64,000 nucleotides of DNA from Octopus bimaculoides (taxonomy: Eukaryota), in contig NC_068990.1 of assembly GCF_001194135.2 (NCBI RefSeq), forward strand, positions 70,193,007-70,257,006. Reading direction: 5' to 3'. The position numbers and the translations under genes were made by a program. The notes below the pieces were generated by a model. The model made no database searches. It saw only the letters and a program-made list of their open reading frames with translations, and was not told the origin of the DNA. Positions within the stretch are counted from its first letter, which is position 1. Each line of letters begins with the position of its first letter. Below, piece after piece: positions 3,241 to 42,816 of this stretch.

Positions 3241-4101
3241 TAAAATTCACACTATTTTATACTTGATTTTTAACTGAAAAACCTGGGGGTTTACTGATAC
3301 ACTAGTAAATATAGTGTGTGTACACACAATGTTTTGGAAAAGTTTTCAAGAATACGTCCATTCACTGTTACTGAGATAACTGAAAATGTGTACACATTGA
3401 GCTATCTGGTCACAATATATTTTTGCCAGTAACTAAGAGTGTTTAAATATAAAGCAACCAAGATGATGTCGCGGTACCAAAGTGGCTAATACAATTGTTA
3501 ATGCTTAGTACTTTTGTCAACCAGAATGGTTTCTCTCAATATAGATTTAAATTTTTATATTACTGATTCTTGTATGGATCAAATCTCTTCACCTCTCCTG
3601 TAACAATATGGTAGTTCTTATAATATATTTGTATCTGATGGGGGAGCAAGAACTCCTTCCTCCATTTACTGTGAACAGAGAGCATTAGTTCCCTGAATTC
3701 ATTTTCAAATTCCTATTCAATTGAATCTTATTTTAGTCTCTACTAATCAATATTCAACTCCATTTTCTGCAGGTCGATGCCTGTAAGGATTAACGGAATT
3801 AAAAGGAAGTAGTGTTGAGGAGAGAAGATTACCAGATTTTGGTAATGAGACAATAAGAAAGACTAAAAAGGATTGTAAGATGCTTGCTAGTTTGGAGGTG
3901 CAGCATCGTTAGTGGCAAATTGATTTCCAACAATGGTACAAGGTCACCAAACTGGGGTGGGTATAATAAACTTACCCCAGTACTTCACCAGTACTATATT
4001 TTTTTCAACCCTAAAGAAATGAAAAGTAACGAGGACTTCAGCAGTATTTGAACTCAGAAGGCAGGTGGCTAGAACTAAATTACTTTTGTTTCACAATTTA
4101 A

Positions 4102-4308: not shown

Positions 4309-6026
4309 TTAATAGTTTCAGTGTTGTATGCAAACTCCTGAAATGAGTACGAGGACTGTATGAAGTGTACAAAGGAATAGCATCTTTTAAACGCTTTCCA
4401 GAAGGTTTGTGTATAGAAGATGTTACCTCCCACCATCACTTGGACCATTACTCCAATATGTGGTACATTTGTGCTTTGTAAAGGGCCAGCAGATGTTTTG
4501 AGCAGAATTTGTTTGTGGGCTTAAAAAGAAAGACCCAGTCTTTCAGAAGCCGTCATAGCATTGTTATCAAATATATGATCAACATGAAAGATATGCATTT
4601 GTAGCAACCTCAAGAAAAGGTAGGCTGTTTTTTAGAGATGGTTTTCTTGATGTATATCGTGACGTAATGCAAGTGTATGGATTGTATGGATGAAACCTAT
4701 ATATGAAAGGCCGAGGAGCAAAGGATACCTCTACCACAATGAAATTAATAGCTAGTATATAGTAGATGAAGCATGCGAGGGACATGACTGAGCTGAGGAA
4801 TATAAGAGTTAATGGAATGTGGATGAAGAGGAAACTTCCACAAAGAAAAGGAGACAGTTGTCCAAGGGCTACTTTTCTAGTAGATTCTTGTACTATGCAG
4901 AAAATAGGTTTCTTGATATAAAATGAAAACCACAACACAGTTTTTTTTCTGAAGTAGTTAATGAAAAATCACAAATGTGATTGCTAATAAAAAAATTACC
5001 CAATACATTTGCTCAACAACAATGATGATAAAGGAGGTATCATTTATGAGCATATATCACTGAAATACAGCATTTGTGGGCAGTTGGTGGGCAAGAGTGA
5101 TAGCAGTAGATGAGATATATAGCTAGAGAAATGATAAATGAAGTGTTTATCCAAGAAAGGAATGCAGTAAGATTGGTTACCCAAATAGACACATGGTTAG
5201 AGGCGTTAACACAGAAACTGTGTGCAAGATTGCCCAGCAGGTAGGGCCTTGAGAAAAGTGAATATAAGAGGAATTTTCATGTGTTTATCGCGCAAAGTGA
5301 AAATGGAGGCAAAGCGGGCAGCAACTGTGATGGAATTACTGACAGAAGCATATATAATTAGGAGTTTGAGAAATGGTAAACAGAATTAGGTAAAGGTCGT
5401 AGAAAACAAGAAAGCCTAGCTGTAGTTTGGGGAGGGAGAGAGAGAAAGGTTTGAAATGAGGATGAGTAATACATGATATTTTTTGGTTTTTCTAGTCATA
5501 TAACAAGACATTATGGTGACTGAATACTCCACCTTGTTGGAAGCAGAATCAATGTTCTTCGACTGTATAGCAGCAGCACACTTTCTCTTTCAGTATTAAT
5601 GTCTTGGAGGTAACTGAACTTAGCTAAATTCTAGCAAGTCCTCAGCTATCCACAGTCATTGGCCATATCACTTCATGTATTAAGTTACTATGTGATTATG
5701 CATGCACATGTTAAATATGTTTCTGAAAACTTTCTCTAGATTCCTAAACTACTAACACTATGAAGGGAGATGGGTGTGAGGAAGGAACATTGGATGAATT
5801 TTCTCCAGATTGCAATTATTTCCCCTCTTTAATGAAATGCCTCATTTCATTAAATGAATAAGCCACAAGTCATGTCATGCTGATAATTTTGAAAAAGAAT
5901 GAAATAATGACATATGATTACCACCAACTAGAAATTTTAAGAACTTTGTAATTAAAAAAAAAGTGAATTCTATGCAACTTTTCTCTTAAATCCCTTAATT
6001 TGAAATTCAAATTTCTAATCCCTGTT

Positions 6027-6240
6027 AGGGTAGTGAGCTGGCAGAATTGTAAGCACACTGGATAAAATGCTTAGCAGTATTTCTTTTGGCTTTACATACT
6101 GAGTTCAAATACTGCTGATGTCAACTTTACTGTTCATTCTTTTGCAGTTGATAAAATAAGTACCAGTTGAGTACTGAAATTGATGTAATTGACTTTCCCA
6201 CCCCTCTCAGGCTCTGGTGCTTATAGTAGAAAGAATTATT
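6027..6240 (+). mobile_element. Older copy of the same Nin/Deu-like SINE
   Basis: GGTAGTGAGCTGGCAGAATT..GAGTTCAAAT..GATAAAATAAGTACCAG. Further decayed copies at about 3918-4080(-), 9817-9950(-), 10030-10215(-), 34148-34358(+) and 34372-34550(+). Confidence 0.8.
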
Positions 6241-8444
6241 AGCAGCAATGTATCATTAGTAAAAACTGGGTCTTTCTAGCCACTTAAATCACATTTCTGG
6301 TTATAATATTAATCCACTTTAGTGCTTCTTTAGCTAATAGGTCTTGCAGATTGAGAAGTTTTATTTTGCTGCCAGAATAAAAAGACACTGTCAGTGAGAA
6401 GTATCAATGATTTCAAGTAACCAATGATAAAGTCTAAGACAGACAGACCCTTTATGTCTTAAATCCAAAGAAGGAATGAACTAAAATTAAAAGTAAATTT
6501 CAACAGCCTTGTGTTTGTTTGTATGTCAGTATGCAAGTATCAGCTGGTTTCTGATGTCTTGCAATGCTGACAGGTATTGGTGGGAAGAGAAAGAGTCAAA
6601 GACAGATCTAAATCAACTATGGAATATGGGAGAGAAAAGTGACACATTTAACAGAGGGGTGAAAAGATGAATTAAGACCTACTGGCAGCATGCAAAATAC
6701 AGTAAGTATCTGACTAAGCTTACCTGCATTGGGGGGTCCAAAAGAGTTGACTGTTAAGGAAGGAAAACAAAAAAAATATTCTACTTGTTTTTCTTAGAGC
6801 ATAGTTGGATTACATTTTGAAAATAGCAACCAATCTTGAGAAAGGTACCATGTCAGCAAGAGTTTACATGTCAATAAGGGTTTAGATAAGCATTTTAGTA
6901 TTAAATTGAGTAGTTGAGAAAGATGCTCAAAAATTGTTAAACTCCAAGTAAGTTTCATTATATTTAGGTAATTCTCTGCAAAGCATTTTAACATTAAACT
7001 GAGTAGTTTTATGAAGACAGTCAAACATCAGTAAACTTGAAATTAATTCCATTATATTAAGATAATTCTCTGAGCTAAATTGTCTTCATTGGAATCTATG
7101 CCTAAAAGATGGATAAATTATCAGTAAATCTATTAGAATGGCACCAACAACACATTTCAATTACTTAGTGTGTTATGGTTCTGACTATCTACTATGTAAT
7201 TTCTTTTACATTTTAAGTCTTTTTTAAATTATCATAATAGAGTTGAAGAGCTTGCAAATCTGAATATTTGTACAAATAGTCTTAGAGAAAGAAACAAAGA
7301 AAAGAAAAAAGGGGGAATTTTATTACATTCATTTTTCTTCATATTTTACAGCAATATGCTCATTCCACTGACAATTATTCAGGAATAGAAATGGAGTTAG
7401 TTCTACCATTCAGTCAGGTGAATCTGTAGTAGGCAGAATTAGGTACCTTGCTCAAAATGGTCCAAAATAACAGCCAAGATTCAAATTTATACCTGGTCAA
7501 TCACCCAGTAACTTTACCTCATAGCCATCATGCCTCAAATATGTGTGTGTGCGTGTAAATTTCAAAAGTTGGAAAAGGCTGTAGGATTCAGCAAATTTAA
7601 ATAGAACAAGCTTGTTCTGAGATTGGAAGGAATCGTATTTGTATGCATTTAGTCTTGCTGTAAAATTAAACAATGGTAAGATATTGATTGCGTGTGAGCT
7701 TGGAACAAGACTAAATACATACTGATGACTAGCCAATGCTATCTTGGTTACTCTAGTAATTCTAAAGACAGGTAACCAGTTTTATATATAAGTATATATA
7801 CCCTTGTGTAAAACATATACACCACACCTTTATACACTTAATATTGTGGTGTTGATGCCAACCAATCTGCGATCACCTCTGGTCCTACCATACAAAACTA
7901 ATTCTATAAGATATTTTAACGAAAATCTCCAGTCATAGCTTCATTAAATTTAAACTGTTTTTGAAATATAACTTGACAAGTGACTTAAATACAGCTATTT
8001 TACTAATTCCTTATAAAATTTTGATTATTTTCAAAGTTAATCGAAGAACACAACCAATGCATTCCATTAGAAATTTAGTAAGGAAAGTTTTAGCACCAAG
8101 CTAAGTTTAAATCAAGTTTAAAAAGATGTAAAAAGCAAATAACAGAATGCTTTTGAATAAGAAATTTTCATTAAAAATTAAAAGAAAAACCAATGAGAAA
8201 GGCTATCAAACTGATTAGTTTTGATATAAAAACGTCTAGTTTTTAAATGCTATTGAATTAAAACAAGAGTGCAGTGAGAAAGACCAACTTGCTTTTAGTA
8301 ATATAAAAGTTAGTATATCTCAAAATGAGTTGACAACAGTTAATTGTGATTTCCATTAAATTCTATTGTAAACAGATCAAAAACTAGCAACAAGAAAATA
8401 ATTCATCCTTCATGAAGCCAAAGAATAAAATTCTTGATACTAAC

Positions 8445-8543
8445 CATAAGGACCTTCTTCACCCAAAGCACCTTTGTTGGCAATCTGAGAGACTTCCTCG
8501 TTTATGTCTACTCCAGCGGCTTCCACATCCCAAGTGCGAAATC
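8445..8543 (-). CDS. futsch: MAP1/futsch-family protein, coding exon 2 (G-FRTWDVEAAGVDINEEVSQIANKGALGEEGPY-G)
   Basis: Acceptor ttttctgtttccag and donor G|GTTAGT. 99 nt, phase 1-1, open frame. GFRTWD..INEEV matches the MAP1 GIRSWD..LDQEL block that follows the exon-1 motif. Confidence 0.88.
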
Positions 8544-9261
8544 CTGGAAACAGAAAAGGTTATAAAAATCAGTATTTCTATGAAAATAACACTTTGAAGA
8601 AATATGGCATATCATACAAACATTGGCAGACATAAAATAAAGAATATAATAGCTTAGCAAACTAGTAGTTCACTGGGCAGTATTATGATTAATCATTTGT
8701 GAATAATTGAAAAATAATATATAGTAGAGGAGCCAGAAGAAACAAATTCTGATGATGAAAGATTGAACTAAATACGAAAAATATTGCAATTTTTCCTTTT
8801 GATGAGAAAAATGTAATAAAGCCCTGAAAACAGAACTAAACTAGAGTACAATATTTTAAGACTAGAAGTAAGGGTAATGCCTGTGATCTCTTTGCAGGGT
8901 CTTGAAAAGTAGTGGCAGTCAAGAAGCAGAAAGGTAACTCGATTGGTATGGTAGAAAGTAACACAAAGATATCTTTAAAACTAGGTCAACAGAGCCCAAC
9001 ACTCAACAGGCTTCCAGTTTCCACCATCCAGAAATAATTTACACTAAAAGTAACCTCAGCACAATCTGAAGTGTTGGTACAGGTTCAATATGACTGCTCA
9101 CATCTAAACACACATGAAAAACTTATTTCATAAAGCATTAAAAATGTTCGCCTATTTTTTAATCTCAAATTCTTTCAACATGGAAGTAAAGAAGAAAAAA
9201 AGGCAGCATTGACCAGGAATTTCACATATTAAACAAATTCTCTTTAGATTTTAGTACATGT

Positions 9262-9557
9262 ATCTTCAGTCATGACTGGCCATGCTGGGATACCACCGGG
9301 CAGTGTTTAAAAGGAACAAAACTTCAATACTTATTCTAGTGGTCTCTTTTGCCAAATCATTAAGTTATGGGGATGTAAACAAACATCAATTGTTGAGCAG
9401 TGATGGGGGACAAACATGGTTTTCATATACCAAATTCACTCACAAAACAGTTACCCTGGGGCTATAATAGAAATTTGCCCAAGGTGCCATGCAGTAGAAC
9501 TGAACCCAAAATCACATGGTTGCAAAATGAGCTTCTTAAGCACACAGCCATGCTTGT
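9262..9557 (-). mobile_element. CORE-like SINE, near full length
   Basis: Plus strand shows TTGCCCAAGGTGCCATGCAGTAGAACTGAACCC..CACACAGCCATGC. Similar decayed copies at about 12781-12921 and 20885-21150 (two in tandem), all minus. Confidence 0.75.
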
Positions 9558-11825
9558 GCAATACATTTCTATAGTCTGTTCACATTGCCATTGTGATTCA
9601 TATTATTATTATTATACAAAAATAAAGACATACACAAAAGGCTAGAAGTGTTTAATCCTGTTCATGAGTCAACTTCTCATAAACCAGAAAATATGTGGGA
9701 CATGAAAATCATGAAACATTCACCTTTATACTTATTCAATTACCACTCCCAAAATCTGGGCAGGTATTTACAGCTATAGCTGTACTAGTCAGAAAGTAAG
9801 AAATACCATATAAAATATTGGTTTCAAATTTTTGGCACAAGGACAGCAATTTTGAAGAAGACTAGTTGATTACAAAAAACCCAGTGCTTGAATATGCTTT
9901 GACTATGAAAGGATGAATGGTGAAGTTGACTGCTAGGATTTGAACTCAGTGGCATCTCTTCCAGCTCTTTTCTTCTAAGTATTTCGTTCCATGTGTTAAT
10001 GATTATGCTTGTGCATTGCCCTTAATAATGGTTCTAAGTTTTTGCAGGCCAGAAAACTTACGGGGGTAGGGAGGTCATTATATTGACTCCAGTCTTCAAC
10101 TGGTATTTTGACCCCAAAAGGATAAAAAAGTGAAGTAGCATTTTAACTCAGAATGGAAGAAATACTGCAAAGCATTTTTGTCTGATGTGTTAATGATTCT
10201 ATCAGCTTGCTACCTTAATAATAATAGTAATAATCTTATTGTACACACTGCTCAGGTGCTGAGAAGTTGCTTGAGTGAATGACAATTTGTATCAAGGTTT
10301 CAATGAAAAATTGAAGTTAACAGGAAATGTTGAAAGGTTTTAATTTAGAACACTTTAAACAAAATTTATGTAGAGCCAATGGTCAGTATCAAAAAAAGAG
10401 ACTTACACTGAACTTAAAGTTGTTTGGTAGTAACACAATTCTCATTAAACTAAATGAATTTGGTTTTTCAAGGATAGTGCCAAAGCAGTTAAAGTGTTAC
10501 TTTTGTACATTAAATTGGGATTAAAACAAAGTAGAACAAATGCAAACAGCAAAAAACTTCCTTGAAACCAACATGATTTAAATGTAACTTTCTGCCAGTT
10601 TACACCAAAATTCAAATGAGACTGCTATTAGCAAACTTCATACAAAACCCTCAAAGTTTGATCACTGGAGGACCATGCTACACCAAACATAACTGCAGAC
10701 CCTTCTATTCTTAAATAAATCACAGTTGCCAGTTTAAGTATGAGAGTACTTGTGGAAACATGTCCAGATGAAAGCAGTGTCTGGAACTGCTTCAAAACAA
10801 GCTTTCATGTATTGAGGGTGTTTTTGTTATCTGCTTCTGGGAATAAACAGGAACAAAGCTGTGCAATTAAATAAAGAAATTGATGCCAAGACCTTTTCAC
10901 ATAGAGTTGCAGGAAGGATTTTGCCAAAGAGCAGACTTGAAAAGCTACAGATTTTAACCCAAGTATTCACATGACTGGTATAATATAATTAGTATATTCT
11001 CTTCCTCTCCACCAGAGAGGGAACATGAAATGTTTGTTTTACTTGGAGAAAACAATTTACAGAAAGTAATCTTTGCAGTTGTGACCTCCTATTCCTAATC
11101 AATGATTTTTCTTCTTTAAATTACGTTTTAATTACAACTACATGACATTATTAAGAAAATATTACCAATATTATTGAAAAAGAGATGAAATTGAAAATAT
11201 AAAATAACCAAAGCAAATTTAAAAGGGTCTACATAAAAGTTAAATTTGTGTGCATGTTGATTTAAAATATTTTTATCTCTATCAATAATACACCCAACAT
11301 TTACATTGCAGAGCATTAGTTAATTTGAATAATTAGATAGGAACAGCAGGTATGCTGTTACATAGATGTTTGAGTAAACCTTTAAAATATAAATACTTCC
11401 CTAATCTTATCACTCCTTGAAAACCATATTTTCTTACCAGATTCCTTTGACAGAATTCATAAAGAAAAGTTATGACTTGGCAAAATGCCAATGAATTTAA
11501 ATAAGGAATTTTGAAGTTGGTCCAGGTGTTAAAGACTGATAAAGCTATACTGGTATTTGGAGAATCAAAGGAAATCTACTCATTCAAGAATCTTTGTTCC
11601 AAATCCACCCAAAATTCCAGACAAGAATTTTTAATGGCTTTTAGATAAGAGGAAAAAAATGTTCCCTTTAGTTAAGGGAGCTACATCACAAAACTCCCTT
11701 AGTAAAACATACTGCAGTTTGCCTCTCTTGAACAAGATAGATTAAAAACAGGAATGTCAGGAAGGGGTGGATTGATAGCTCAGATGGGTGTTAGTTTTCT
11801 TCCTTCTGCCTTTTTTCATCAGATA

Positions 11826-11827
<2 letters not shown>

Positions 11828-11922
<95 letters not shown>
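11828..11922. repeat. (TG)n microsatellite
   Basis: Uninterrupted TG run. Confidence 0.98.
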
Positions 11923-11924
<2 letters not shown>

Positions 11925-13549
11925 CACTTAAAACTAACAAATAAGTTTACATTAATACAAACGCCATCAATCAAACAATACAATTTTTTAAAAATGCTTT
12001 CTAATTTAGGCACAAGGCCAGCAATTTTGAGGATAAGGAGCAAGTGAATATATTCTATTTTCAATCCCAGAATGATGGAAAGTGAAATTAACTTCAATGG
12101 GATTTGAGTTCTGAATGTAAAGCACCATATCTTCTTACTCTAAAATCAATTTAGGGTAAGTCCACAGGGTACAACTAAATTATTGCACCTGTAGATGGGA
12201 TACTTGTCATACCTAAACTAAGGAATAATCTCCCCTACTTTTCTTAACCAGAATTGACCATTAAGCCATTCTTTTTCCTCTTCACAAGATTACAGATGCA
12301 ATTCTAACATCTTGGCACGAACCTGAGGACAAAGCACTGAATGCAGTTTTAATTTTAATTAAGGCTATTATTTGCTCCAATAATAGACCTATTGAAGGTC
12401 ATACTGTAGCCTTGTCCTCATAGGTCCCCTTTTGCTGAATTAGCTGATATAACAATGAGGTACCTCCTAAGTCAGCAAATCTTTTTGAACCTTTAAATGC
12501 TGGACTGTTACAGATATATTTAGCATTGTTTTTTAACACCCATTTTCTAAGCTTGCACAGGTTCAACAGAATTCTTTGAAACAAATTTTCTCAGGCCAGA
12601 CGCCCTTCCTGTCACCAACTCACTTCTTTCCAAGTAAGGTAATATCTTCCCATGGCTAGACGTTACCACAGAAAACTGGAAACCAACAACACCATGCATG
12701 ATGGTGATTGTTTACAATTTTCATTTGAAAACAAGGAAACAGTGACACAAACACGCATGCAAACACAAATATAAACTACCGGCTTTTTTAAAGTTTCTAT
12801 CAAAGTCACTCACAGGGATTTGGAGCTATAGTAGAAAACATTTGTCCATGATGCTATGCAGGAGAGTAAATCTGAAACCATGTGGTTGAGAAACAAACTT
12901 CTCAACCCGACAGCCATACCTGTACCCATATATTTTAGATTGAGGTAAAAGTATAATTTTTGTTTTCTGTAATATGATAGAGCAGGGAGATTTTTTTCTC
13001 GAAAGTTTACTATGCATCACTCCAATTAGTCACTCTAAACCTGTTAGAAATAAGTGAAATTTCCCTCAAATTTTACACGGACTTCAAACAAGTCACATTT
13101 GATAATTGAGGCCCAGACAGACTGTTTTAAATTAAGATGTGATGGCCACACCACTAGAAGAACCCTTTGATCAAATGTCAGCTCGATTAGGAGTAAGTTG
13201 GTGTAAGACTAAAGTCATTACCAAAGTAGAGTTACTCAAAACAGAATTCAGTTATATTTTCAGAGACAAATTATTTTAGAATGGAAAACTTTAGCAATAA
13301 AACATTTGAAGAAAAAAAAAAGTCGGTTATATATTTCTAAAAGGGATACAAGTCGAAAATAAAACAGTCCTTTAAATGCAGACATACACCGCCATGCCAA
13401 CTAAATTTGGCAATTTCTGAGCCTAGTTGCATGTCTGTATATGTACATAGATGTAAATGGTAAAGTTGCACAAAAATGATAAATATATGTAGGTGGGGGC
13501 TTCAAGGATCTAGCAAATCCCAGCTATATATATTTTATAGTCAAAATTA

Positions 13550-14880
13550 ACATACATACACATATGAACCGAGCACATAATTAACTACCCAACTTGGCTC
13601 CATTAGCCGCAAACCAAAACGTATAGAAAAAAAAACGGGAAGGGTGATAATAGGGGAAGGAGCAGGAAAGAAAACGAGAAAAGAGAGGGAAGTAGGAAAG
13701 AGAATAGAAATAAGAGAAAAAAAGGGGAGTCAGACAAAGAAGAAAAGGGAGCAGAAAGGGATGAAAGGAGGAAAAAAAAGGGAAAACCAACTAACCAATC
13801 TCTGCCAGTATCAGATTCACATATATCAAGGACCCATGAGAACCCCGAAAGTTGCCATAAATGTACAATAGTTAGCAACCAGGCTAAAAGTATACAAGGT
13901 TAATTGTAGCTAAAATATCTGTCCCCGCCCTTGTATCTCTCCCCAGCAGTAGAAGTCAACTGTCAGAAATAAGTGAAGTATTATTCAAGAAGCCAATTAT
14001 AAAGAGAAATAGTCAGATTCGACGTTTATTCCAACTTTTACAAAAACAAAAGCAGGGAGAAAAAAAGTTGATAATTATACATAAGCAATAAATAATAATT
14101 TTAAAAATTGTATGCTTAACATACATTTCGTCTATTATTCCCGCCAGCTTGTAACGAACAGACACTACCACTATATATATATTTAATATGAGGGTGCCAC
14201 TCATTCACACAGCAGTGCAGTAAACCGGTATGTGTGTTGTATGTCTAACATAATACTTCCATTACTACCTCCGCCGCCAGCCTTAATTGATTATTCAGAT
14301 TACAGTCTAACACACCCACATACGCACAGAGGTAGTAAACAACTCCATTTCTCCTCTAATATTTTCTGTGTAAAAGTTATCACTTTCAGACAAAGATACT
14401 GTGCTACTACGCTAAAAAGAATGTACAACCAACCAGTTTTAACAAGATGAAGGAGGCAGGCACACATCGGTGTGGATATTAATATGGTCACAGGTCACTG
14501 GGATGAATTATATTAGCTAGGTAAACTATAATACTTCTTCTGTAGAGTTGTAATGTGGCTTGTCTGTCAATTTCATTCGCCACACAAACCAGCCTGAGCA
14601 ATACACCAGGCAGTTTAATACAACAGACCAACGGAAGAAGCCTCCACGTGGCTGCTAGAAATAGCAGCCGAATTTCACCACGAATCACACGACCATTATA
14701 AAGGAACACATTAGATCATGTTATTTCACGTTCGTCTAAAAAGATAGGATGAACACGGCCTAGAGTTACAGATTGCTCGATTAGAGCTTACCTATAGTAG
14801 CAAGCACCAACATACAAACCATTGCGGGACGATTTTTTTTTTTAATCTACATGAAATTTAATTTAAAAAACGATTTGACA
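13550..14880. promoter_or_regulatory. Intronic CpG-retaining island, candidate internal promoter or enhancer
   Basis: CG dinucleotides are visibly frequent (CCGCCGCC, CCCCGCCC, CACGTG, CGGGACG) compared with CG-poor flanks. No TE hallmarks recognised. Confidence 0.45.
14792..14822 (-). CDS. Candidate alternative first coding exon of the MAP1/futsch gene (MVCMLVLATI+G)
   Basis: GCA ATG G start, 10 open codons plus G, strong AG|GTAAGC donor, same phase as exon 1. Lies at the edge of a CpG-retaining island, with no polypyrimidine acceptor immediately upstream. Confidence 0.5.
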
Positions 14881-15939
14881 CTACGGATTCACTATATGAA
14901 AATACCAGTTGTACTGTATATTTAACCATTAAACACACAACCAATGTAGTAGTTGAAGATTTGGCTGCAATGTAACTGATGAAATTCCCAGAATCTGGAA
15001 GCTGGACAAAATTTTAAAGCCAACCAATAAACAAAGTGAATAGTATTCAGGTTCATCACCCTCACATGCAGACCCTGGAAAATTCTAGAAAAGCTAATCC
15101 TTAATACAATTAACCCATGCATCCCCTTCAAATCTCAATAAGGATTCAGACCATTACATCCAACCAATTCATTACCCACAAACCTAACACAGAAAGTACA
15201 AGATGGCGTTAGCAAGCCAACTACCAACATCAGCCAAGCTTTCAATTGCTCACTATCCATAAAAAAAGACCACATGGCTAGTAAACTATCAGGCTGCCAA
15301 GCTTATGTAATAAACAACGATTCTAGAACTTGCAATTTCCCCAGGATGAAAATTCCCCAAGGATTTGTTCACCTATCCATTTTTTTTCAGCCTGTAACCA
15401 CATGACCTTTCCACACCACAAAATAGACAGCCTAATCTACAAAGAATGGCACACTCACCATTCTACAAGCTCTGCTGTACAACTATTCTAACCCTATATA
15501 AATTTGCTCAAAACTTGGGTCCAAAACAACACAGAGTTGTACCTACCAAATCAACTGTTTTCTTCGTTATCACTAGCAACATAAGAGAACAACTACAACC
15601 AACCATCACATCAAGCAACAATACATAAACCACTTATACAACAATACCACAACCAACAAAAATTCAATCTTTGTAACACACACAGAGAGAGGACATGGTG
15701 AAGAAAGTAAAATAAAGTGTAGAAACTATATTGGATCTGCCATGACTTATGAATCTTGGTCAGAACCCAATCTCTCCACAACTAACTACAACACTAAGAA
15801 CCCAAACAGTGCAATAAACAAGATTTATATAGACCGCAATCTTTAAAAGACATTGAAAAGGTGCAATTTCTTGCTACCGCAAGTCTCACTACTTACAGTC
15901 CCTGTTATTACATGAAAAATCCACTTCCAAACACCAAGT

Positions 15940-15953
15940 CACACACACACACA

Positions 15954-16030
<77 letters not shown>
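15940..16030. repeat. (CA)n microsatellite
   Basis: CA run with one interruption. Confidence 0.98.
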
Positions 16031-16032
<2 letters not shown>

Positions 16033-16411
16033 CACCCTAGACTTAGTACTACAATGACATTCTAAAACTACTATCTCTGCTATCCAGCTTCAACATTCAT
16101 AAACGAAAAATATACATAGATACAAAAACAGTTGCAACATCAATAACCTCACTGGTCTTGAACATTGTCCAAACATGTGACACCATCAGAATCTTTGGGA
16201 ATGTAATATGGCTGGACAGTAGTGTGTAAATATGTCCAGATTGTCAGAGTCAAAATATGGTCTATAGACATGACCAGAGTGATTGTATGGCTACAAGACT
16301 GCAGGATCAGGGTTTATCTGGGGTTGCATAATTTTTAAAACAGCCAAAGGAACTAGTTTATAACAGTCAACATTTGGTTCATCCACCTTTACAGATTACA
16401 TCATATGAAGG

Positions 16412-16611
16412 CAGAAAACAGCAGCAGTCATAACATGCATATCTAATTGATAACTATCAATATTAGGTAAGTAACAACATAAGCCAGATCAATAAAAGGC
16501 AATATTCCAGCCAGAAAACAGCAGCAGTCATAACATGCATATCTAATTGATAACTATCAATATTAGGTAAATAACAACATAAGCCAGATCAATAAAAGGC
16601 AATATTCCAGC
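16412..16611. repeat. Tandem duplication, 2 x 100 bp
   Basis: 16412-16511 and 16512-16611 are identical except G16471 versus A16571. Confidence 0.95.
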
Positions 16612-19600
16612 ATCAATTTTATTGATTTGGTTGAAACAAATTAAAAAACCAATGACATAACTGATCTAACAGTCCTGTGGCCCCATTTCCCTAATTACAC
16701 TATATCTGTGAGAAACTACTGCACACTGCAGCATGCAGTAATAAATCAGATATATAGAGTGCAACAATGTGCCAATTAGGAACGTATTGCACTATGTCCA
16801 CTGTACAATAACCAATATTAGCAGTGGCCACAGAGGAGGCAGACAATGCAAAGTAGAACAGAATATGACAGTTGTTCCACTAAATATTCCTCAAGCACAA
16901 TATTTTAGATTAGCCAGACTGGATATTGCAACTATTTCTGTTTCTATTTTGTTGACTAAAACAAGCTGAAGAACTAATGAACTTTAATGTCTGACCTACT
17001 AATTAACAAGATACTAGAGCAGTATATCAATTTCTTCATTTACTGAAAAAAAAGTTAGAACTTATAATTTTTTATCAATGATGGTGACGTGCAGAGAGAA
17101 CCAAAAGTATGAAAATAAATTACTGTTAAAATCAATATATTTGTATGAAGGTCAATTATCAACTGTGACAAAAATTGTACTCTTCCTTACTTTCAACTAT
17201 GAAGACAATGTGATATCACAATACAGACGTGTGTGGTTTGAATTTCTATGAAATAAATACTTGATTGAACCAGTTAAGATTATTGATGTGAACATAGATA
17301 CATGAAATGAAGCAGATGAAGTGAATAATGAATTCAATAAATTACAATTGGTCACTGGTCAGTGCATAAATATACACATATGCATACACCTTTCAATATA
17401 CAATACATCTGGTGCTTCATACACACACTGAAATTTGAAGAGCAAAAATCAACTTCCCATCATTCTAATACTGACTACCAATAGTTGTCAATATGATTGA
17501 GGGGAAAAATATTCCAAAAGATTATTCTGTATATTTAATAGAAATACAACAGGGTCACAAATGGAAAATATAGTAAGCCGAAAAACTGATTAAGACTATC
17601 AAAGCAATTAGCAGGCAAAAACTCCCTCTGGGCGATAAAATCAATTGAATTCAGATTGGAGTATATCTGGTTAAAGATTGAATCCTTGTCCATTGCTTTC
17701 AGTTATCTTCAGAGGCCAGATCCCTACATACTGTATTGTAGACAATAGATCATAGGTACCAACAATTTTAATCAACTGACCATCCTGTAGTTATCCCCTT
17801 GCTTTTTAGATTTTAAAACAGTTTTTGCTTACTAATTGCAAGGATAATCTCTGTTGTTCAAAATCTTTCAACTCACAATTCCATATTTCCTTCACAACCA
17901 CAGTGGAAGTGAAGTAGGATTGCCATTATTATGTCAATGAAGTTATTTGTAGTCGACAACATAATTAACAACCACAGAGAGGAAATCACTAAAATTGGAT
18001 GAGGTCATTGCTACCAGTAAATTGCTTGCTCCACTTTGGAGAGTATAGTCATTCAGTGAAAGGGCAGGGCTAATATCATTCACATTATTTTGAGATGACG
18101 AAACTGTAGCCCAGCCCAATACTCCACAGGTTTTAAGATAGAGAATGCAACAGAAAAATATCCAATATTTTACACAACTATTGATGAGGCACTAGTGAAG
18201 TAAGCTAGACAATAACAGTATTTTCATGTAGCTCATGTTTTATGAATTTTTTTGTTGAAATGCTTATCAAGAATAGTGAATCTGGAGGTGTCTTTTGTTG
18301 CACTTTGTATCTCGTGATTACACCTCACTTCTGCTCTTCCTATCATGTTGATTAACCCCCAATAAAAAGAGTTGATTCATCCAACTATATTTTTTTTTCC
18401 CCTAAAATTGTCCAGCTACTCAGTCAAAAGAACTGTTGGTAGGTAAGTATGTTAAGTACCATAGTATGACAGCAAGTTGTCAAAGAGCAGCTTTCAATTT
18501 CCAGTTTTACTTATGCTTACAGTGTCCCACATATACAACAACTTTTCACAGTTCTGACAGACATTAAAATGCATCAGTAAAACCAAAATCAAAGGAGATT
18601 TTGCAGTTGCTTGACTTGCTAACAACAGAAGCCATATCTAAAACCACACTGAACAACAGAACAAATGAAATGTCTAATCACAAATTTGTCCAATCAGTCT
18701 TGATCTTGGGCTAAACAACGAAGTCCACATGATGGTGAGGATTTGGGGCCTATATTGTTCATGGTCTTAAAAAAGGCTATCAAACTACTAAAATGGGTCT
18801 ATGAATAGCTCAAACAGCTGGGAATCATAGCAAAAATCCCTTAATAGTCATGAAAAATCCTAGAAACAGTGTCTGATTGGAAGATGGTTGTAAAGGAAAT
18901 CTGATTTCTGATTATGGACCTGCTGTTCAATCAGGATTGAACTAAGTGAAACAAGATAAGCCTTACACTAGCATATGGTGTGGTATTTTAAAATGCTGTT
19001 GTATGTCTAGTGTGGTGACGTGTTAAATGACAAAAGAAAAATCAAGAAAATATGACACTGCATGTGGTGTGTAATTTAAACAAATTTGGTTAAAATTGTA
19101 TTAGTGTCTTTAGAGCATGGCGCAGTCCTCTGGCTTGTCAGCTCCTGCCAAACTGACCAGCCACTGCCAGAATGGAAAATGGACATTAAATGATAATTCA
19201 ATATCATTTAGACTTAATTATCCAGTTGCACATGACAACCTAGTTGGAAGTATTCAGACGATCTTTGGTTTGAGAATAACTCACAATCTGATTTATTCCT
19301 CCAATTTATACCACAAGTGTTGGAGGTAGAGCAATAAGTTTGTAGACAATGGGCCTTCCTCTTCAAAAATGTAGATAAAAAAAACAAAAAAAAACAGCAA
19401 CAATTAATGATCTAGTGTGGTAAGAATGAAATATAAGATACACATGCTTCTAAGAAGTGGACTGTACTTGTAAAATAGCAGTAAGCTGTAACTTGGGTTG
19501 TACTCTATAGATTTCTACACTAAATGCATTATTAAAACATTGAACATAAAAATCCTAATGAAAGAAAATTTCTTTTCATAAATGTACACAAACTTCAGAA

Positions 19601-21550
19601 GCAAGATATTGAAAGAATGTTCCTAACATTGTTTTACTTTCCATAATAACAGCACTTAGGCAACAATCAATTTAACAGCTGAAGTCTGTTATTTAACTAG
19701 CCACTAACTTACTGTGTGTGGGTGTGTGTATTTACAGTTTGGCTGCGTAAATACATATATTTAGCTTTAAATATATGGCTACAAAAACCTTCAGTTTATA
19801 TTAAGCCATTCATACTTTGTAGGAACTTGTCAAATGACTAGAGAAAGGATATGATCAGAGTTAACAAAGAAGAATGAACTTAGGTTTTTGTTAACTTCAG
19901 ATATTAGAGAGTGAGCATCCAATAACTTGTTTCCCTTGAATGATGGCAGCAAGGTTGAGAGAGAAATGTTTAAAGTGTTGTAGGTATATTTATGATAGGC
20001 TCTCATTTGTAATACAGTAAGTTAATAAACTTTGATCATCTATGTAATTAGATACACACACAACCCCACCACCACCACGAAAAAAATCTATCCACAACCA
20101 AAGAAAATAACTAAGATTAATTGATCTGAGTATAATATGAAAGGAACATGATTTATAGATCAAAAAGTTGATTGGCATGGAATTTACAAACATAAAAAAT
20201 GTTCGTATTTTAAAATTGGCTATAAAGGTACACTAAAACAGTCACACACAAATACAAGGAAAATGCAGTATAATAATTCACACACTTTCAAGTGATTGAG
20301 CAGGTTTTGCTTTCAAATTCAACTGTTTTACTGCTTATTTTGCTAAAAATTCCCAGCATATGGGAATCATCTTAAAACTTAATCAGCACCTCAGCTTTAC
20401 AGCCTAGGTTTCATTTCTCAGGCATACAAAGAAACAAATTATTGAACAATAATTGAGAATGTTTAAAAGATATTTCAAAAAATATCTTTTTCAAACTACA
20501 ATGAATTGTATTTCTCACACTATCCATAGGTGATATTAAACTCACTGCACGTGTCACAAGGTCCCATAACAGTCTTCTGCTTTGAAAGAATTCATATAAC
20601 TTTATACAAATTTAATATTATTTCATCTGTATTTGCATATGCGTTTCATCAACTTCTATTCTTTAGAAGAAATATATATTAATTTGGAGTTTCTATTAAG
20701 GATAGATTATTATTTGTTTTTACTTTTGTTTTTCTGTCCTTTTTACAAAGCTTTGCCAGTTTCCTCAATCTTTATTTTCTGTCTTCAAAGGCACAAAGCT
20801 AGCGATCTGTTAAGAGAAATATCACTTGTATCTTACAATTTTCGTAGTAGCACAAAAATGTAAACAAACATACATTTGTCTTCATCCACTTTTCATCTAG
20901 CAAATCAATTCATAAGGCTTTGGTCAGTCTGGAGCTATAGCAGACACTTGCCCAAAGTACTGTGCAGCAGAACTGAATCCGAAACTACATTGTTGCAGAG
21001 AAGCAAACTTCTTATCCACATAGCTACTCCTGTACTTCAGGCTGTGGTCAGTCTCGAGTCATAGAAAACAACTGCTCAAGATGTTGTACAAGGAGACTGA
21101 ACCTGATACCATGTAGTTGGGAAGTGAACTTAACCACACAGCCATTCCTGGTTAAGTAATTCCATAATATAATCATGATCAGAAACTAGTCTTGTATGAT
21201 AACCACCAAATACATGCTAAGAATATTGAGAAAACAAGGTTCACGTATGCAATGTATGTTCAAAATATGTTAGATCCCTAACTCAATTACAATCTATAAC
21301 AATAATTTGCAATAAATTTTAGATCATGTATGACCAGGTATGGTATATTTACACTATGCCATGTAAATTTTAACCCTACAGTAGTAAACATACTCTTGGT
21401 TGAAAATCATGGTTTCAGCTAATCCACTACATAAAACTACACCCCAAATTGCAACATGTGGAGCAGCCAGCTACCCCCCCCCCCCAAAAAAAAACATGCA
21501 TTAGTGATTTATATAGTCAAATTTCAATAAACCATTGCTTCAGTTACAAG

Positions 21551-21751
21551 TAGGGAGGGCTGTGGAGCCGAAACAAAAAAACTGACTCCAACTCCTCTAT
21601 GTAATTAAGTGATTGTGGTGTACATATCTCAAAGTATATGCATACGCTTTTACTTAGAAGAGGCTTATATGTTATAACTGGTTTATATTAAATCAAAGAT
21701 GTTGTGATTTGGAGTTGATATAGTTTTACTGACTCCGACTCCAGAGCCCTG
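21551..21751. mobile_element. hAT MITE
   Basis: Ends AGGGCTGTGGAGCCG..CCGACTCCAGAGCCCTG. Perfect 8-bp TSD GTTACAAG at 21543-21550 and 21752-21759. Confidence 0.85.
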
Positions 21752-23036
21752 GTTACAAGTCAATACTTGTGAATAGTTACTTCAATGTTAGTGTTAATTA
21801 GCTTGACAAAACAGTAGATAGAGATGTATTTTAATCTATATGCAAGATACAGTGCATACTATGAATCATCCTCTTACAAATACAAGACTTAAATATCTTC
21901 TAATGTCAATGGTTAACAAATATGATCTGCATTCACTCATTTTTGCCAATGAATTCCTAAAATGATAGAATTAAAAATATTTCAGTGCAAGATCCTTGAG
22001 TTTGGTTAGAAATATTTAAATAGAGATTGTTAGGAAAATACTACATTAACATTACTCTGTTTTATAAAAAATACAGATCCAACTGGTGTGCTAGAGACAG
22101 CAACCAGTTCTCCCTCAACTGTCTAACATGCAACTTTATTCACATTGTTTTGAATTAATCATGCATTATATTGTAGCTTCAAGACTTCAATGATGTGACT
22201 ATTTTTAGAATGACATTGCACAGATTATATCCTGTCAGTTTGAATATGAAAAAAATATTTGGGCTGGATAGGGTCAGCTTAAATGCTAAAAGGTTAAACA
22301 GGAAATGACAAATGTTATCTTGAATGGTCATTATCGATCATATCTGCTGAATCAGGGCTGAGCAGTTAATACAATTTAAATTATATACTCAGCTACTATC
22401 ACAGGTTGTGTGACCTCAAACTGAAGTAACTGATATAGTTTTTTTCCAGGTTATGGTGTGGGAGGCAAAAAAATAAAATAAACCCACCCAATTTACTATC
22501 AGTTTAGTGTTTAGCTAAATTAGCAGTTATTAGTAAGGATTATGGGAGTAGGCATTCAACTCTAGCTGGATAGGAAGGGTACCAATGACTAGCTAGGTTG
22601 ATGGCGGGGATAGAACAAGCAAGTGAGTCATAGCTCTTGTGATTTACTCGCGCCCTACATTGGAATGAAAGATGGCAGGATAGAAAAGTCTGCAATATTT
22701 GGAGTCACAGACAGTAGCCCTAATTTAAAAGAAACAGAGTGAATATGTAGTGATAATATCTCAAAAAGAAATTTTATTACATCTACTTTTATTATTATAT
22801 CATCATGAAAGAATTTGTATATAACTGGCCATATAAACAGTTTATAATTTGACATTTATAGCAAATGTCATCTTAACAAACAGTCCAAATGAGAGCTAAC
22901 CACTTTTTGAAAAATAAACTTTAGCTCAACACAACCAGATGTATTTTGTTCTAAATATATCAATGTCAGACTAAATGGATTCTTGATTCATCTACCAAAC
23001 TGATACAGATTATACGATTCTATATTTTTGAGACAA

Positions 23037-37869: not shown

Positions 37870-39660
37870 CAATGCCTGTGGGACACAAGATACATTGAAT
37901 CCAATGATGACTGTAACTCAATCTTCAGTGTATAGCTAGCTTGTCATAGAGACATTAATATTTGGTTAGAGACCAGATGTCATTCTGCATGCATGACTTT
38001 TCCCCGCCCCCATCCACTTCTGATGGTACTGAACATATTTCTTGATATCTTCAATCCACTCTGCTCCATCATTCTAACTACCAAAGTGACCATCAGGTAG
38101 TAATGGCTTCCACCCATGAGGGATTGACGTTGCTTCTCTTTCAAATAGTCTTCAACTGTGAACTGCTTCTTTGGTCCTGCAGCTAGATGATCACCATGCC
38201 AGAGTTCTGATGTGCAAGAAACTGCCACATGTGATACAATTCAGATATGTTCATTATATAAAAAGCCATTTTAATGGATGAATTCAATATTGGTGTTGCA
38301 TTTCCATGTACATAACACTGCCTTGCCAAGTGACTGAAAGGCTCTTCTGTTAGGGTTAGTGTCTTAATGTGTCAGCTACATGTGGCCTATGTCTCACACC
38401 CATACAGGGAGATGGGAACAATGTTTCAGACATACAGAGTATGCTTGAAATGGTTTAGAATCTTGGCCAGTATACAGTCATCAGAAATTATGCAGCCAAG
38501 ATATGTGAATTTTGAGAGCTTGTGGCTGTTATTGAAGAAAGTGTGTGTGTGTGTGTGGGGGCTAACAGTATCATTAGTAGATTACCTTAGTAAAATTAAA
38601 ATTTTATAGAGAATCTTTATTAGGTTAATATCCTATAGTCAACAAGCTTTAATCTTGACTATGCTTTAATTATGATGTTAATTTATGCTCATTCTTATAA
38701 AAAGTGGACATCTGCCAAGATGAAGGTTCATGAGGTTTCCAGAGTATATGTGAACTAATAGTTAAGACATCCTTATACTGTAGATCACTGAACTGGGATT
38801 TTCTTGTTGAAAAGGTTCCCATCAAATAGGAAGTTAATGGTAACCCCTATCTTCCTTTGTGTAACTGTAGTTATGCAAGATGAAGATAAACAGTACAAGA
38901 GTTAGTACACAGCCTAATCTAACTGATATTTTTATTCTTAAAAGCTCAGACATCTACCCTCCAACAACTCGAGTAATCTTCCCTGTGTGAAAGTGAGAAT
39001 ATCTTACAGAAGTTCTAAACTTACAGTATTATAAATCCACAAAAGCAATGATGTGGACTACATTGTTCCTTACGTTTCTTCTGACGTTATCTTGTAACAA
39101 GAATCACAGCAACTGTCTTAGCTCCTGCAGAAGCCATACTGTGATTGTGGTGGATTTATTTTCATATTACTGATTAAACTAACCCTTTGAGAATGACCAT
39201 CCCAGCAAAATCAGAGCATACAGATTTTTGTAGAAGTTGACAATGTTAGAGTTCTTCCAACATTGTATACATACTATTCTCAGTTCCCTGTATCTGTGAT
39301 GTAGTGCATTTATGCAGTGATAACCATCCTTCAAAAGCTCTATTAGAATATTGTCTGATCCTTACATGATAGTTTTCAATGTTTTGATGGCCGTACTTTC
39401 AGAAACTGCCAGTGGCTTTTCAAAATTCCTTAACGACTGTTGGATTCACTGGTCTTATGGTACTGCTGCTTTAAGTATTCTTCCAGTGATCTACTATTGC
39501 CAACTCCTCTTTCAATAGAGAAATGTTACCTGACGTTTGGGGCTTTGAAAATTTCTGAACAATAGGTCTCTGACATCATAGAAATTGTGCATGTCACACC
39601 TGTCTACATGCCTGTAAATTTATTTAGCTTTTGCAACCCATCATTCCTCTTTCAAGGCGC
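37870..39660 (-). mobile_element. Heavily decayed RTE-1/BovB-like LINE
   Basis: Minus-strand peptides in the expected order: PQSQYGFCRS (39150-39121), IIAFVDL (about 39050), GVTINFLFDGNLFN, KFTYLGCIISDD (about 38500) and ELWHG..GPKKQF (ORF 37980-38228). Confidence 0.75.
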
Positions 39661-42707: not shown

Positions 42708-42816
42708 CTTTAGCTAATTCCTCCGGGATTAAATGTTTATGGTCCTCAGTTACAGGTTCTCCAATAATAAGAAGTAACGCAGCCTTGGTAGCTGCGGCCG
42801 TTCCGAAATCCTCCAT
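42708..42816 (-). CDS. futsch: MAP1/futsch-family microtubule-associated protein, first coding exon (MEDFGTAAATKAALLLIIGEPVTEDHKHLIPEELAK+G)
   Basis: ATG in strong context (ACG ATG G). LLLIIGEPVTEDHK..EELAKG resembles the MAP1 N-terminus (LLVVVGEIVTEEHL..IELG in vertebrate MAP1B, recalled from memory). The exon ends in phase 1 at G|GTAAAG and joins exon 2 in frame. Confidence 0.85.

What the first reader, a model, noticed from the sequence alone, without database searches (positions are those of the whole stretch)
13550..14880. Candidate second promoter and alternative N-terminal exon (MVCMLVLATI) inside MAP1 intron 1
Seen: on the minus strand, GCA ATG GTT TGT ATG TTG GTG CTT GCT ACT ATA G|GTAAGC (14822-14792). 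The exon is phase 1 like exon 1 and gives MVCMLVLATIGFRTWDV.. when joined to exon 2 across a 6.25-kb intron. It heads a CpG-retaining island of about 1.3 kb extending into its downstream intron, mirroring the CpG-rich zone downstream of exon 1. Inference: a shorter transcription unit that replaces the conserved LLLIIGEP strand with a hydrophobic, Cys-containing peptide, possibly changing folding, lipidation or localisation. A phase match alone has a 1-in-3 chance probability.
Basis: partly seen in the sequence, partly recalled or inferred. Interest (0 to 1): 0.7.

Follow-up and report, generated by a model that had tools for sequence, protein, structure and literature searches.

The report
Unused mini-exon in real CpG patch
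The proposed alternative start exon of this MAP1 (microtubule-associated protein) gene is a chance ATG-plus-splice-site motif that no RNA data examined uses; the CpG-rich patch around it is real, and a different, weak splice donor 358 bases downstream joins exon 2 only at trace level.

Summary
The sequence is as described. On the minus strand it reads ATG 14822-14820 ... ATAG(14792)|GTAAGC, in phase with exon 2 (8543). It sits at the upstream edge of a real CpG-retaining patch: 14020-14885 has 25 CpG against 4 expected.

The interpretation mostly fails:
- ATG, open frame, GTRAG donor and matching phase occur together 15 times in this 34-kb intron, so the motif is expected by chance.
- In three raw RNA-seq runs, all 263 listed reads crossing the 5' edge of exon 2 come from exon 1. 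Depth over the proposed exon is zero.
- Contigs from four further runs pass through 14792|14791 without splicing.

One assembled RNA contig does join this interval to exon 2. It uses another donor, CTG|GTTGGT at 14434|14433. Its depth is about 6, against thousands for exon 2. Its leader is at least 1.5 kb long and holds 30 ATGs. Only the last ATG (14467) is in frame, giving MCACLLHLVKT-GFRTWDV.

No transcription start was found in the patch; low-level RNA coverage continues kilobases upstream.

Best reading: a chance motif inside a probably germline-hypomethylated intronic regulatory patch, plus a rare cryptic or minor 5' splice event. A weak promoter inside the patch feeding the 14434 donor is not excluded. 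Interest is low.

The parts
14792..14822 (-). It has a good Kozak context (GCAATGG) and is in phase with exon 2, but no RNA evidence shows it is used.
   Evidence: sequence, frame. (zero depth in three raw RNA runs). (contigs colinear through it). (one of 15 such chance configurations in the intron).
14786..14791 (-). Strong consensus-like donor GTAAGC after TAG. No splice at this site was listed in any run examined.
   Evidence: context TAG|GTAAGC. (only two upstream partners of exon 2 are listed: exon 1 and 14434).
14020..14885 (.). CpG-retaining patch: 25 CpG, o/e 0.85, 37% GC. It is single copy. It is present in related species, with fewer substitutions than its flank.
   Evidence: counts, Poisson P 1.6e-12. 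(no other copy in the window). (DNA depth 6.7-11; orthologous contigs in organisms C and D at 3.0-3.3% substitutions, against 5.5-5.8% in 14673-15930; Fisher P 0.02-0.04).
14434..15968 (-). Segment carried by a 1,564-nt RNA contig of run X1 that is spliced from 14434 into exon 2. It acts as an alternative or cryptic 5' exon. Its 5' end is undefined because the contig stops in a (GT)n microsatellite.
   Evidence: contig 14433-15400+, loose end = + 8515-8542. (reciprocal loose end = + 14435-14464). (exact mapping of both loose ends). (microsatellite).
14428..14433 (-). The donor actually observed, CTG|GTTGGT. It is weak, but it has the same GTT start as exon 2's own donor ATG|GTTAGT.
   Evidence: for the exon 2 donor.
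14465..14467 (-). The only ATG open to the 14434 junction (MCACLLHLVKT|GFRTWDV). Its context is poor (ACACCGATGT). An in-frame stop lies at 14497-14495. In the known leader, 29 other ATGs lie upstream of it.
14833..14843 (-). It is a likely internal oligo-dT priming site, which would explain the depth peaks at 14859-15968 in runs of unknown library type.
   Evidence: A-runs. (peaks of depth 17-26 starting at 14699, 14825, 14859 or 14919). (a second peak, 18366-18745, on the A9 run at 18390-18398).
8445..8543 (-). MAP1 exon 2 (GFRTWDVEAAGVDINEEVSQIANKGALGEEGPY), the acceptor for both exon 1 and the 14434 donor.
42708..42816 (-). Coding part of MAP1 exon 1 (MEDFGTAAATKAALLLIIGEPVTEDHKHLIPEELAK), donor AAG|GTAAAG. 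It is the upstream partner of exon 2 in all 263 listed junction reads.
   Evidence: sequence. (loose-end consensus = + 42710-42739). (Pfam MAPB1_N begins at LLLIIGEP).

Best explanation
The ATG-open frame-GTAAGC motif at 14822-14791 is a chance configuration and is not an exon.

The surrounding 0.9-kb patch (14020-14885) kept its CpGs. Most likely it is protected from germline methylation, as a cis-regulatory element (enhancer-like, or at most a very weak promoter) inside the otherwise CpG-depleted 34-kb first intron of a highly expressed MAP1 gene. This step is inferred, not shown.

The low-level sense RNA over and upstream of the patch is MAP1 intron-containing RNA. In oligo-dT-primed libraries it is boosted by internal priming on the A11 tract at 14833-14843 (also inferred).

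From such RNA a weak donor at 14434 is occasionally spliced to the normal exon 2 acceptor (shown). The product has a leader of at least 1.5 kb with 30 ATGs, so it is most likely non-productive. At best it would be translated from downstream ATGs, rather than giving a defined new N-terminus (inferred).
For: - Chance expectation: 15 of 50 GTRAG sites in the intron have an in-phase ATG-open frame.
- No use of the proposed exon: zero depth at 14740-14873 in X22-X24. All 75, 109 and 79 listed reads crossing the 5' edge of exon 2 derive from exon 1. If none of the 263 uses another partner, the 95% upper bound on usage is about 1.1%.
- Contigs of X1, X11, X16 and X37 are colinear through 14792|14791.
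- Real junction elsewhere: reciprocal loose ends in X1 map exactly to + 8515-8542 and + 14435-14464, giving a GT..AG intron 14433-8544.
- Trace level: that contig has depth 6.05, against 3,500-35,000 over exon 2 in the same run.
- Unspliced RNA through 14434 is seen in X37, X18 and X4.
- Intron coverage at depth 2-6 extends over 16040-22000 in X1, X42 and X37, so no start site is evident in the patch.
- 30 ATGs lie in the known leader, and only the last is in frame.
- The CpG patch is significant (P 1.6e-12), single copy and without RNA-family, tRNA or TE-like repeat signatures.
- The patch is somewhat less diverged than its flank in two related species. None of their listed substitutions falls on the 9 CpGs between 14172 and 14653.
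- Depth peaks abut A-runs.
Against: - In X1, depth is 6 upstream of 14434 and 0 over 13400-14432. That looks more like an exon boundary than sporadic cryptic splicing of pre-mRNA.
- X22 has three partly laid reads. Their laid parts fit 14434 to about 14480, and nothing lies further upstream. They could be 14434 junction reads starting at a transcription start inside the patch. The tool did not display them, so this is unverified. If true, usage in X22 could be up to about 4%.
- Only three raw-read RNA runs, of unknown tissue, were available, and each was sampled at about 6%.
- Contigs cannot show absence.
- Library types of the runs with depth peaks are not on record, so internal priming is an inference.
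- Methylation state and chromatin were not measured.
Confidence: 0.6

Rival explanations
1. A genuine but weak alternative promoter lies inside the CpG patch, with a start near 14480-14540. It produces a short first exon ending at 14434. Spliced to exon 2, this gives a MAP1 isoform that starts MCACLLHLVKT-GFRTWDV and lacks the first strand (LLLIIGEP...) of the MAPB1_N domain.
For: - The canonical junction 14434>8543 is real.
- ATG 14467 is in phase, with the stop just upstream at 14497.
- X22 shows three partly laid reads that fit 14434 to about 14480 and no coverage further upstream.
- X1 has no depth downstream of the donor.
- The patch is CpG-retaining and modestly conserved.
- There is a precedent in vertebrate MAP1B type 2 transcripts (PMC2190583).
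Against: - In X1 the spliced contig continues at least 1.5 kb upstream without a break, and coverage goes on to about 19.3 kb.
- The junction was seen in only 1 of about 9 contig-level runs covering the area.
- X23 and X24 have no reads there, against 109 and 79 exon 1 junction reads.
- The donor is weak and the Kozak context of ATG 14467 is poor.
- Related species carry a 20-nt deletion at about 14475-14494, just upstream of the ATG.
Confidence: 0.15
2. The reader's exon (ATG 14822, donor 14791) is real but restricted to a tissue, cell type or stage absent from the runs examined.
For: The donor is consensus-like (TAG|GTAAGC), the Kozak context is good and the phase is correct. It lies at the upstream edge of the CpG patch. 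Only a few runs of unknown tissue were sampled.
Against: - No junction or depth in X22-X24.
- Four runs read through it.
- In the very deep run X1, only exon 1 and 14434 are listed as partners of exon 2.
- The motif is expected by chance.
- The orthologous stretch 14673-15028 in related species carries 19-31 gap letters and 5-6% substitutions, like neutral intron.
Confidence: 0.04
3. The CpG patch is the promoter of an independent plus-strand (antisense) or other non-coding transcript. The depth peaks at 14700-15968 would be that transcript, not MAP1 RNA.
For: Discrete depth peaks of 17-26, against 4-5 in flanks, start at the patch edge and end at the (CA)n repeat in X16, X18 and X38. Contigs carry no strand information.
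Against: - The only strand-informative event, the GT..AG junction in X1, is on the MAP1 sense strand.
- The peaks abut sense-strand A-runs, as expected for internal priming, and a second peak does the same at 18390.
- No Rfam family matches.
Confidence: 0.08
4. The CpG-rich patch is a recently inserted mobile element or other young sequence that has not yet lost its CpGs. On this reading it has no regulatory meaning.
For: A 40-nt core at 14651-14690 belongs to a dispersed repeat family, with word depth 72-196 in DNA runs. Nine CpGs cluster around it at 14632-14778.
Against: - Apart from that 40-mer, the patch is single copy in DNA runs (depth 6.7-11) and in the window.
- It has no terminal repeats or ORFs with family hits.
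- It is present colinearly in organisms B, C and D, so it predates their split. Its CpGs are unchanged in the listed differences.
Confidence: 0.05

Closest known systems
Vertebrate MAP1B 'type 2' alternative transcripts (non-coding exons 3A/3U upstream of exon 3)
   Same: Both are minor MAP1-family transcripts that start or differ inside an upstream intron, skip exon 1 and splice into a downstream constitutive exon. In mouse they are at most 10% of mRNA, and they potentially give an N-terminally altered or truncated protein (PMC2190583, citing Kutschera et al. 1998). Here a 14434>8543 junction bypasses exon 1 at trace level.
   Different: - The MAP1B alternative exons are upstream of exon 3, are non-coding, and have defined promoters. 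Here the junction enters exon 2.
- No start site is defined here.
- Abundance here is about 0.1% in the one run where it was assembled.
- Homology of the alternative exons was not tested.
Intragenic ('orphan') CpG islands or hypomethylated regions acting as alternative promoters or enhancers in globally methylated genomes (own knowledge, e.g. work of Illingworth, Bird and colleagues)
   Same: It is a discrete CpG-retaining patch (o/e 0.85) in an otherwise CpG-depleted gene body (o/e about 0.15-0.3). It is the second such zone in the gene after the large one around exon 1.
   Different: GC content is only 37%, so the classical CpG-island criteria are not met on GC. The unmethylated state, chromatin marks and transcription initiation are all untested.
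Cryptic 5' splice sites, pseudo-exons and splicing noise in long introns of highly expressed genes (own knowledge)
   Same: A weak donor (CTG|GTTGGT) is joined to the authentic acceptor at about 1e-3 of the main junction in a run where the gene is extremely deeply covered. The stronger-looking decoy donor at 14791 is not used.
   Different: In X1, depth is present upstream of the donor and absent downstream. That is more exon-like than expected for pure noise.
Internal oligo-dT priming on genomic A-tracts in 3'-tag or poly(A)-selected libraries (own knowledge)
   Same: Depth peaks lie immediately 5' (in the sense direction) of the A11 tract at 14833-14843 and the A9 tract at 18390-18398.
   Different: Library types of those runs are not on record. 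One contig (X16) extends 140 nt past the A-tract.

Membership tests
MAP1 family (MAP1A/MAP1B/MAP1S/Futsch) gene | N-terminal MAP1B-type domain | tested here: met
   The exon 1+2 peptide hits Pfam PF23415 MAPB1_N at 32.2 bits (cut-off 27), residues 14-60 to profile positions 1-47 of 197.
MAP1 family (MAP1A/MAP1B/MAP1S/Futsch) gene | Conserved C-terminal light-chain domain and repeat-rich heavy chain | not testable with these tools
   Downstream exons lie outside the window. The protein database returned only exon 1 ORF fragments.
Alternative first exon with its own promoter (as proposed: ATG 14822, donor 14791) | Spliced reads joining the exon's donor to exon 2 | tested here: not met
   Zero depth in X22-X24. 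All 263 listed junction reads come from exon 1. Contigs are colinear through the donor.
Alternative first exon with its own promoter (as proposed: ATG 14822, donor 14791) | Transcript 5' ends (TSS) just upstream of the exon | tested here: not met
   RNA contigs cover 14859-15968 and beyond, upstream of the proposed start, and run through it. CAGE or 5'RACE data were not available, so this test is indirect.
Alternative first exon with its own promoter (as proposed: ATG 14822, donor 14791) | Open reading frame in phase with exon 2 | tested here: met
   However, 15 such configurations occur in this intron by chance.
Alternative first exon with its own promoter (as proposed: ATG 14822, donor 14791) | Conservation of ATG, frame and donor in related species | tested here: inconclusive
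   Orthologous contigs of organisms C and D cover 14673-15028 with 5-6% substitutions and 19-31 gap letters. 
Alternative or cryptic 5' exon ending at 14434 | Canonical splice junction to exon 2 seen in RNA | tested here: met
   Reciprocal loose ends in X1 map exactly, giving GT..AG. It was seen in only one run, at depth about 6.
Alternative or cryptic 5' exon ending at 14434 | Defined 5' end or promoter, and appreciable usage | tested here: inconclusive
   The X1 contig ends in a microsatellite, and coverage continues to about 19.3 kb. X22 may have three junction reads starting near 14480 (not displayed). Usage is about 0.1% in X1, and none was seen in X23 or X24.
CpG island / germline-hypomethylated regulatory region | Local CpG o/e of at least 0.6 over several hundred bases, against a depleted background | tested here: met
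   o/e is 0.85 over 866 nt, against 0.27 for the whole window (25 CpG observed, 4.0 expected from the intron background).
CpG island / germline-hypomethylated regulatory region | G+C of at least 50% (classical Gardiner-Garden criterion) | tested here: not met
   GC is 37%. The genome itself is about 34% GC, and the zone around exon 1 also fails this criterion.
CpG island / germline-hypomethylated regulatory region | Unmethylated DNA, open chromatin or active histone marks | not testable with these tools
   No bisulfite, ATAC or ChIP data could be identified. Library types of candidate runs are not on record.

The most novel reading that the evidence does not exclude
The CpG-retaining patch is a conserved, germline-unmethylated internal promoter of an invertebrate-type MAP1 gene. 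In particular cells it starts transcription near 14480-14540 and uses the 14434 donor. The resulting MAP1 isoform replaces the first strand of the MAPB1_N domain with a short Cys-rich peptide (MCACLLHLVKT, a possible lipidation site). This would parallel, and perhaps predate, the exon-1-skipping transcripts of vertebrate MAP1B.
Probability: 0.1. Interest if true: 0.4.

Novelty: new member of a known kind. Interest (0 to 1): 0.2.

Why it matters
It matters little as it stands. The named exon and peptide should not be annotated.

Two modest points remain:
- The gene has a second, discrete CpG-retaining patch deep in intron 1. It is a good candidate for an intronic regulatory element of a very highly expressed neuronal cytoskeleton gene, and it can be tested directly with methylation and chromatin data.
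- An exon-1-skipping splice into exon 2 exists at trace level. It recalls the minor 'type 2' transcripts of vertebrate MAP1B, which complicated the interpretation of knock-outs (PMC2190583). If it proved tissue-specific, anyone designing a MAP1 knock-out or N-terminal tag in this species would need to take it into account.

Tried and rejected
The likely cause is the (CA)48 microsatellite at 15940-16035. A (TG)47 at 11828-11922 also made it impossible to span 8500-14500 in one call, so junctions had to be inferred from loose ends.
- The protein database search with exon 1+2 returned only unspliced exon 1 ORF fragments (P0001, P0002).
- A chimeric query of five ORFs from 14232-15131, meant to fish out orthologous contigs from relatives, found nothing at E of 10 or below.
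- The contigs encoding P0001 and P0002 gave a roughly 81%-identical orthologue of the exon 1 region only. It does not cover the candidate exon.
- An apparent second match of the exon 1 region inside L001 is not mirrored in the window.
- A paper search for the two run accessions found nothing, so the organism stays unidentified. A cephalopod was my guess, from run years and repeat content. It is untested and is not used in the argument.
- Rfam, tRNA and repeat scans of 12500-16500 were empty, which rejects a snoRNA or miRNA host, or an obvious TE.
- The ORFs in the patch have no Pfam hits, which rejects a nested coding gene.
- A 64-nt cassette 'poison' exon (acceptor cag|T at 14497, donor 14434) was considered for the X22 reads. 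The depth split between bins fits about 47 nt per read better than 64 nt, so it was not adopted. It is not excluded.
Full report
**Observation**

The minus strand reads GCA ATG GTT TGT ATG TTG GTG CTT GCT ACT ATA G|GTAAGC. The ATG is at 14822-14820, the last exon base at 14792 and the GT at 14791-14790. Exon 2 starts at 8543 behind ...tttccag| and encodes GFRTWDVEAAGVDINEEVSQIANKGALGEEGPY. Joining 14792 to 8543 gives MVCMLVLATIGFRTWDV in frame.

Exon 1 (ATG 42816, last base 42708, donor AAG|GTAAAG) encodes MEDFGTAAATKAALLLIIGEPVTEDHKHLIPEELAK and has the same phase. Intron 1 is 34,164 nt. The exon 1+2 peptide passes the Pfam threshold for MAPB1_N (PF23415, 32.2 bits against 27), with the domain starting at LLLIIGEP. 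The gene identity and every coordinate in the finding are therefore correct.

**The CpG patch is real**

The window as a whole has CpG o/e 0.27 at 33.6% GC. The stretch 14020-14885 has 25 CpGs (o/e 0.85, GC 37%), where the rest of the intron predicts 4.0 (Poisson P about 1.6e-12). GpC and TpG+CpA densities are near background. The only other CpG-rich zone in the 64 kb is a broad one at 39.5-47.5 kb around exon 1.

**The exon-like motif is not special**

On the sense strand of intron 1 there are 50 GTRAG sites. Fifteen of them are preceded by an ATG-initiated open frame in the phase needed for exon 2. About 0.6 of these would be expected in a 1.3-kb interval by chance. The 14792 site has the best-looking donor (TAG|GTAAGC) and a good Kozak context, but nothing else distinguishes it.

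**RNA evidence against the proposed exon**

- Three raw-read RNA-seq runs of the same species (X22-X24, each sampled at about 6%) express the gene well: exon 2 depth is about 60-120 once both mate orientations are summed.
- Depth is zero across 14740-14873 in all three.
- At the 5' edge of exon 2, the listed loose ends comprise 75, 109 and 79 reads. Their consensus is TTAGCTAATTCCTCCGGGATTAAATGTTTA, with agreement 1, 0.99 and 1. This is + 42710-42739, the end of exon 1.
- If none of these 263 reads uses another partner, the 95% upper bound on alternative usage is about 1.1%.
- Contigs of four other runs (X1, X11, X16, X37) are colinear through 14792|14791.
- Coverage in several runs lies upstream of the proposed start (14859-15968) and runs through it. 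That is the wrong side for a transcript starting at 14830-14900.

**A different junction exists**

A 1,564-nt contig in X1 covers 14433-15968 without a mismatch and then continues with AGCGGCTTCCACATCCCAAGTGCGAAAT, which is + 8515-8542, that is, exon 2. Seen from exon 2, the reciprocal loose end AGTTTTAACAAGATGAAGGAGGCAGGCACA is + 14435-14464. The intron removed is 14433-8544, with GT..AG ends and the donor CTG|GTTGGT. The donor is weak, though exon 2's own donor is also GTT (ATG|GTTAGT).

The frame through it is open only from the stop at 14497. It contains one ATG (14467), which gives MCACLLHLVKT|GFRTWDV. The known leader (14434-15968) holds 30 ATGs, of which this is the last. The contig ends in a (GT)n microsatellite at 15940-16035, so its 5' end is unknown.

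**How much, and from where**

In X1 the junction contig has word depth 6.05, while exon 2 reaches 3,500-35,000. That is of the order of 0.1%.

Other runs carry colinear, unspliced contigs through 14434: X37 at 14319-14513, X18 at 14180-14508, and X4 from a related species at 14225-14463. None of them shows the junction.

The intron between 16040 and 22000 is covered almost continuously at depth 2-6 in X1, X42 and X37. Low-level RNA over the patch is therefore not exon-specific, and no start site is evident within the finding's coordinates.

Two observations keep a real minor transcription unit alive:
- In X1, depth is 6 upstream of 14434 and 0 across 13400-14432. Upstream coverage fades out near 19.3 kb.
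- In X22, three partly laid reads contribute depth that fits 14434 to about 14480, and nothing lies further upstream. They may be junction reads that begin at a start site inside the patch.

**Depth peaks in runs of unknown type**

X16, X18, X38 and X46 show depth 17-26 over roughly 14700/14859/14919-15968, against 4-5 nearby. DNA runs show the region is single copy (depth 6.7-11). The low-coordinate edge of these peaks abuts an A11 tract on the sense strand (14833-14843), the longest A-run in the intron. A second X18 peak (18366-18745) sits on an A9 tract at 18390-18398. I infer internal oligo-dT priming on MAP1 pre-mRNA in 3'-biased libraries rather than promoter activity. The library types are not on record, so this remains an inference.

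**What the patch is**

- It has no Rfam match, tRNA or terminal repeats.
- It has no other copy in the window, and its ORFs have no Pfam hits.
- A 40-nt palindrome-containing core at 14651-14690 belongs to a dispersed repeat (depth 72-196). The rest is unique.
- Orthologous contigs of two related species (organisms C and D) align colinearly. They show 3.0-3.3% substitutions over 14172-14772, against 5.5-5.8% over 14673-15930 (Fisher P 0.02-0.04). Several indels are also present: 20, 17 and 3 nt lost, and 3 and 9 nt gained.
- None of the listed substitutions falls on the nine CpGs of 14172-14653.

This fits a sequence shielded from germline methylation in several lineages, that is, a cis-regulatory element. 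It argues against a young insertion. Whether it acts as an enhancer or a weak promoter is not shown.

**Comparison with known cases**

Vertebrate MAP1B has minor 'type 2' transcripts, at most 10% of the mRNA. They carry non-coding exons 3A or 3U instead of exons 1-2 and potentially encode an N-terminally truncated protein (PMC2190583). The trace 14434>8543 RNA resembles these in skipping exon 1. It differs in position and abundance, and no promoter has been defined for it.

The patch resembles the intragenic 'orphan' CpG islands of globally methylated genomes (own knowledge). It fails the classical GC criterion, and none of its epigenetic attributes were measured.

**Verdict**

The specific interpretation (promoter plus MVCMLVLATI exon) is not supported by the RNA data and is explained by chance. 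The general idea, an exon-1-skipping 5' exon arising in this CpG patch, has faint support through a different donor, at a level compatible with cryptic splicing. Overall this is an ordinary locus with one modestly interesting candidate regulatory patch.

Noticed in passing
window 6724-6750 (minus strand): A 27-nt in-frame micro-exon, cag|TCAACTCTTTTGGACCCCCCAATGCAG|gtaagc (VNSFGPPNA). It is joined to the end of exon 2 (8445) in 7-12 reads per raw RNA run. Whether it is constitutive or alternative was not resolved.
   Followed up: partly
window 39500-47500: A broad, roughly 8-kb CpG-rich zone (o/e about 1.0 at 30-40% GC) surrounds MAP1 exon 1. It extends about 3 kb into intron 1 and about 4.7 kb upstream. 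It looks like a large hypomethylated promoter domain.
   Followed up: partly
window 14651-14690: A 40-nt core with the palindrome GGCTGCTAGAAATAGCAGCC is a dispersed repeat. Word depth is 72-196 in DNA runs of three related species, against 6-11 for its flanks, and many contigs match only this core at about 80% identity.
   Followed up: no
window 13650-13800 (minus strand): A pyrimidine (CT)-rich tract of about 150 nt lies on the MAP1 sense strand, just downstream of the CpG patch.
   Followed up: no
window 11828-11922, 15940-16035, 16412-16611: (TG)47 and (CA)48 microsatellites, and a 99%-identical 100-nt tandem duplication, lie in intron 1. The microsatellites break RNA contigs and probably caused the read-laying tool to refuse a stretch that contained one.
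   Followed up: partly
window 4034-4060, 6025-6176, 19025-19223, 21413-21810: Repeat-derived segments have very high RNA and DNA word depth, up to 559. They show many 'opposite strand' joints and A>G or T>C variant positions, and are presumably expressed multi-copy elements.
   Followed up: no
L001 1-3366 (SRR11869385), matching window 43085-39625: This is the orthologous exon 1 region from a more distant relative, at about 75-81% DNA identity. The 37 exon 1 residues are 100% conserved. P0002 (ERR3431203) is 90% identical over the aligned exon 1 part.
   Followed up: partly
window 53420-53797 (+): A 125-aa ORF with a retrotransposon-like RRGRPKKTW...DL motif lies in the highest-GC (43%) kilobase of the window. 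It has no Pfam hit.
   Followed up: no
window ~44250, ~46870-47300, ~61200-61500: Runs of N (assembly gaps) are flanked by long (TA)n or (TATG)n-type microsatellites upstream of exon 1.
   Followed up: no
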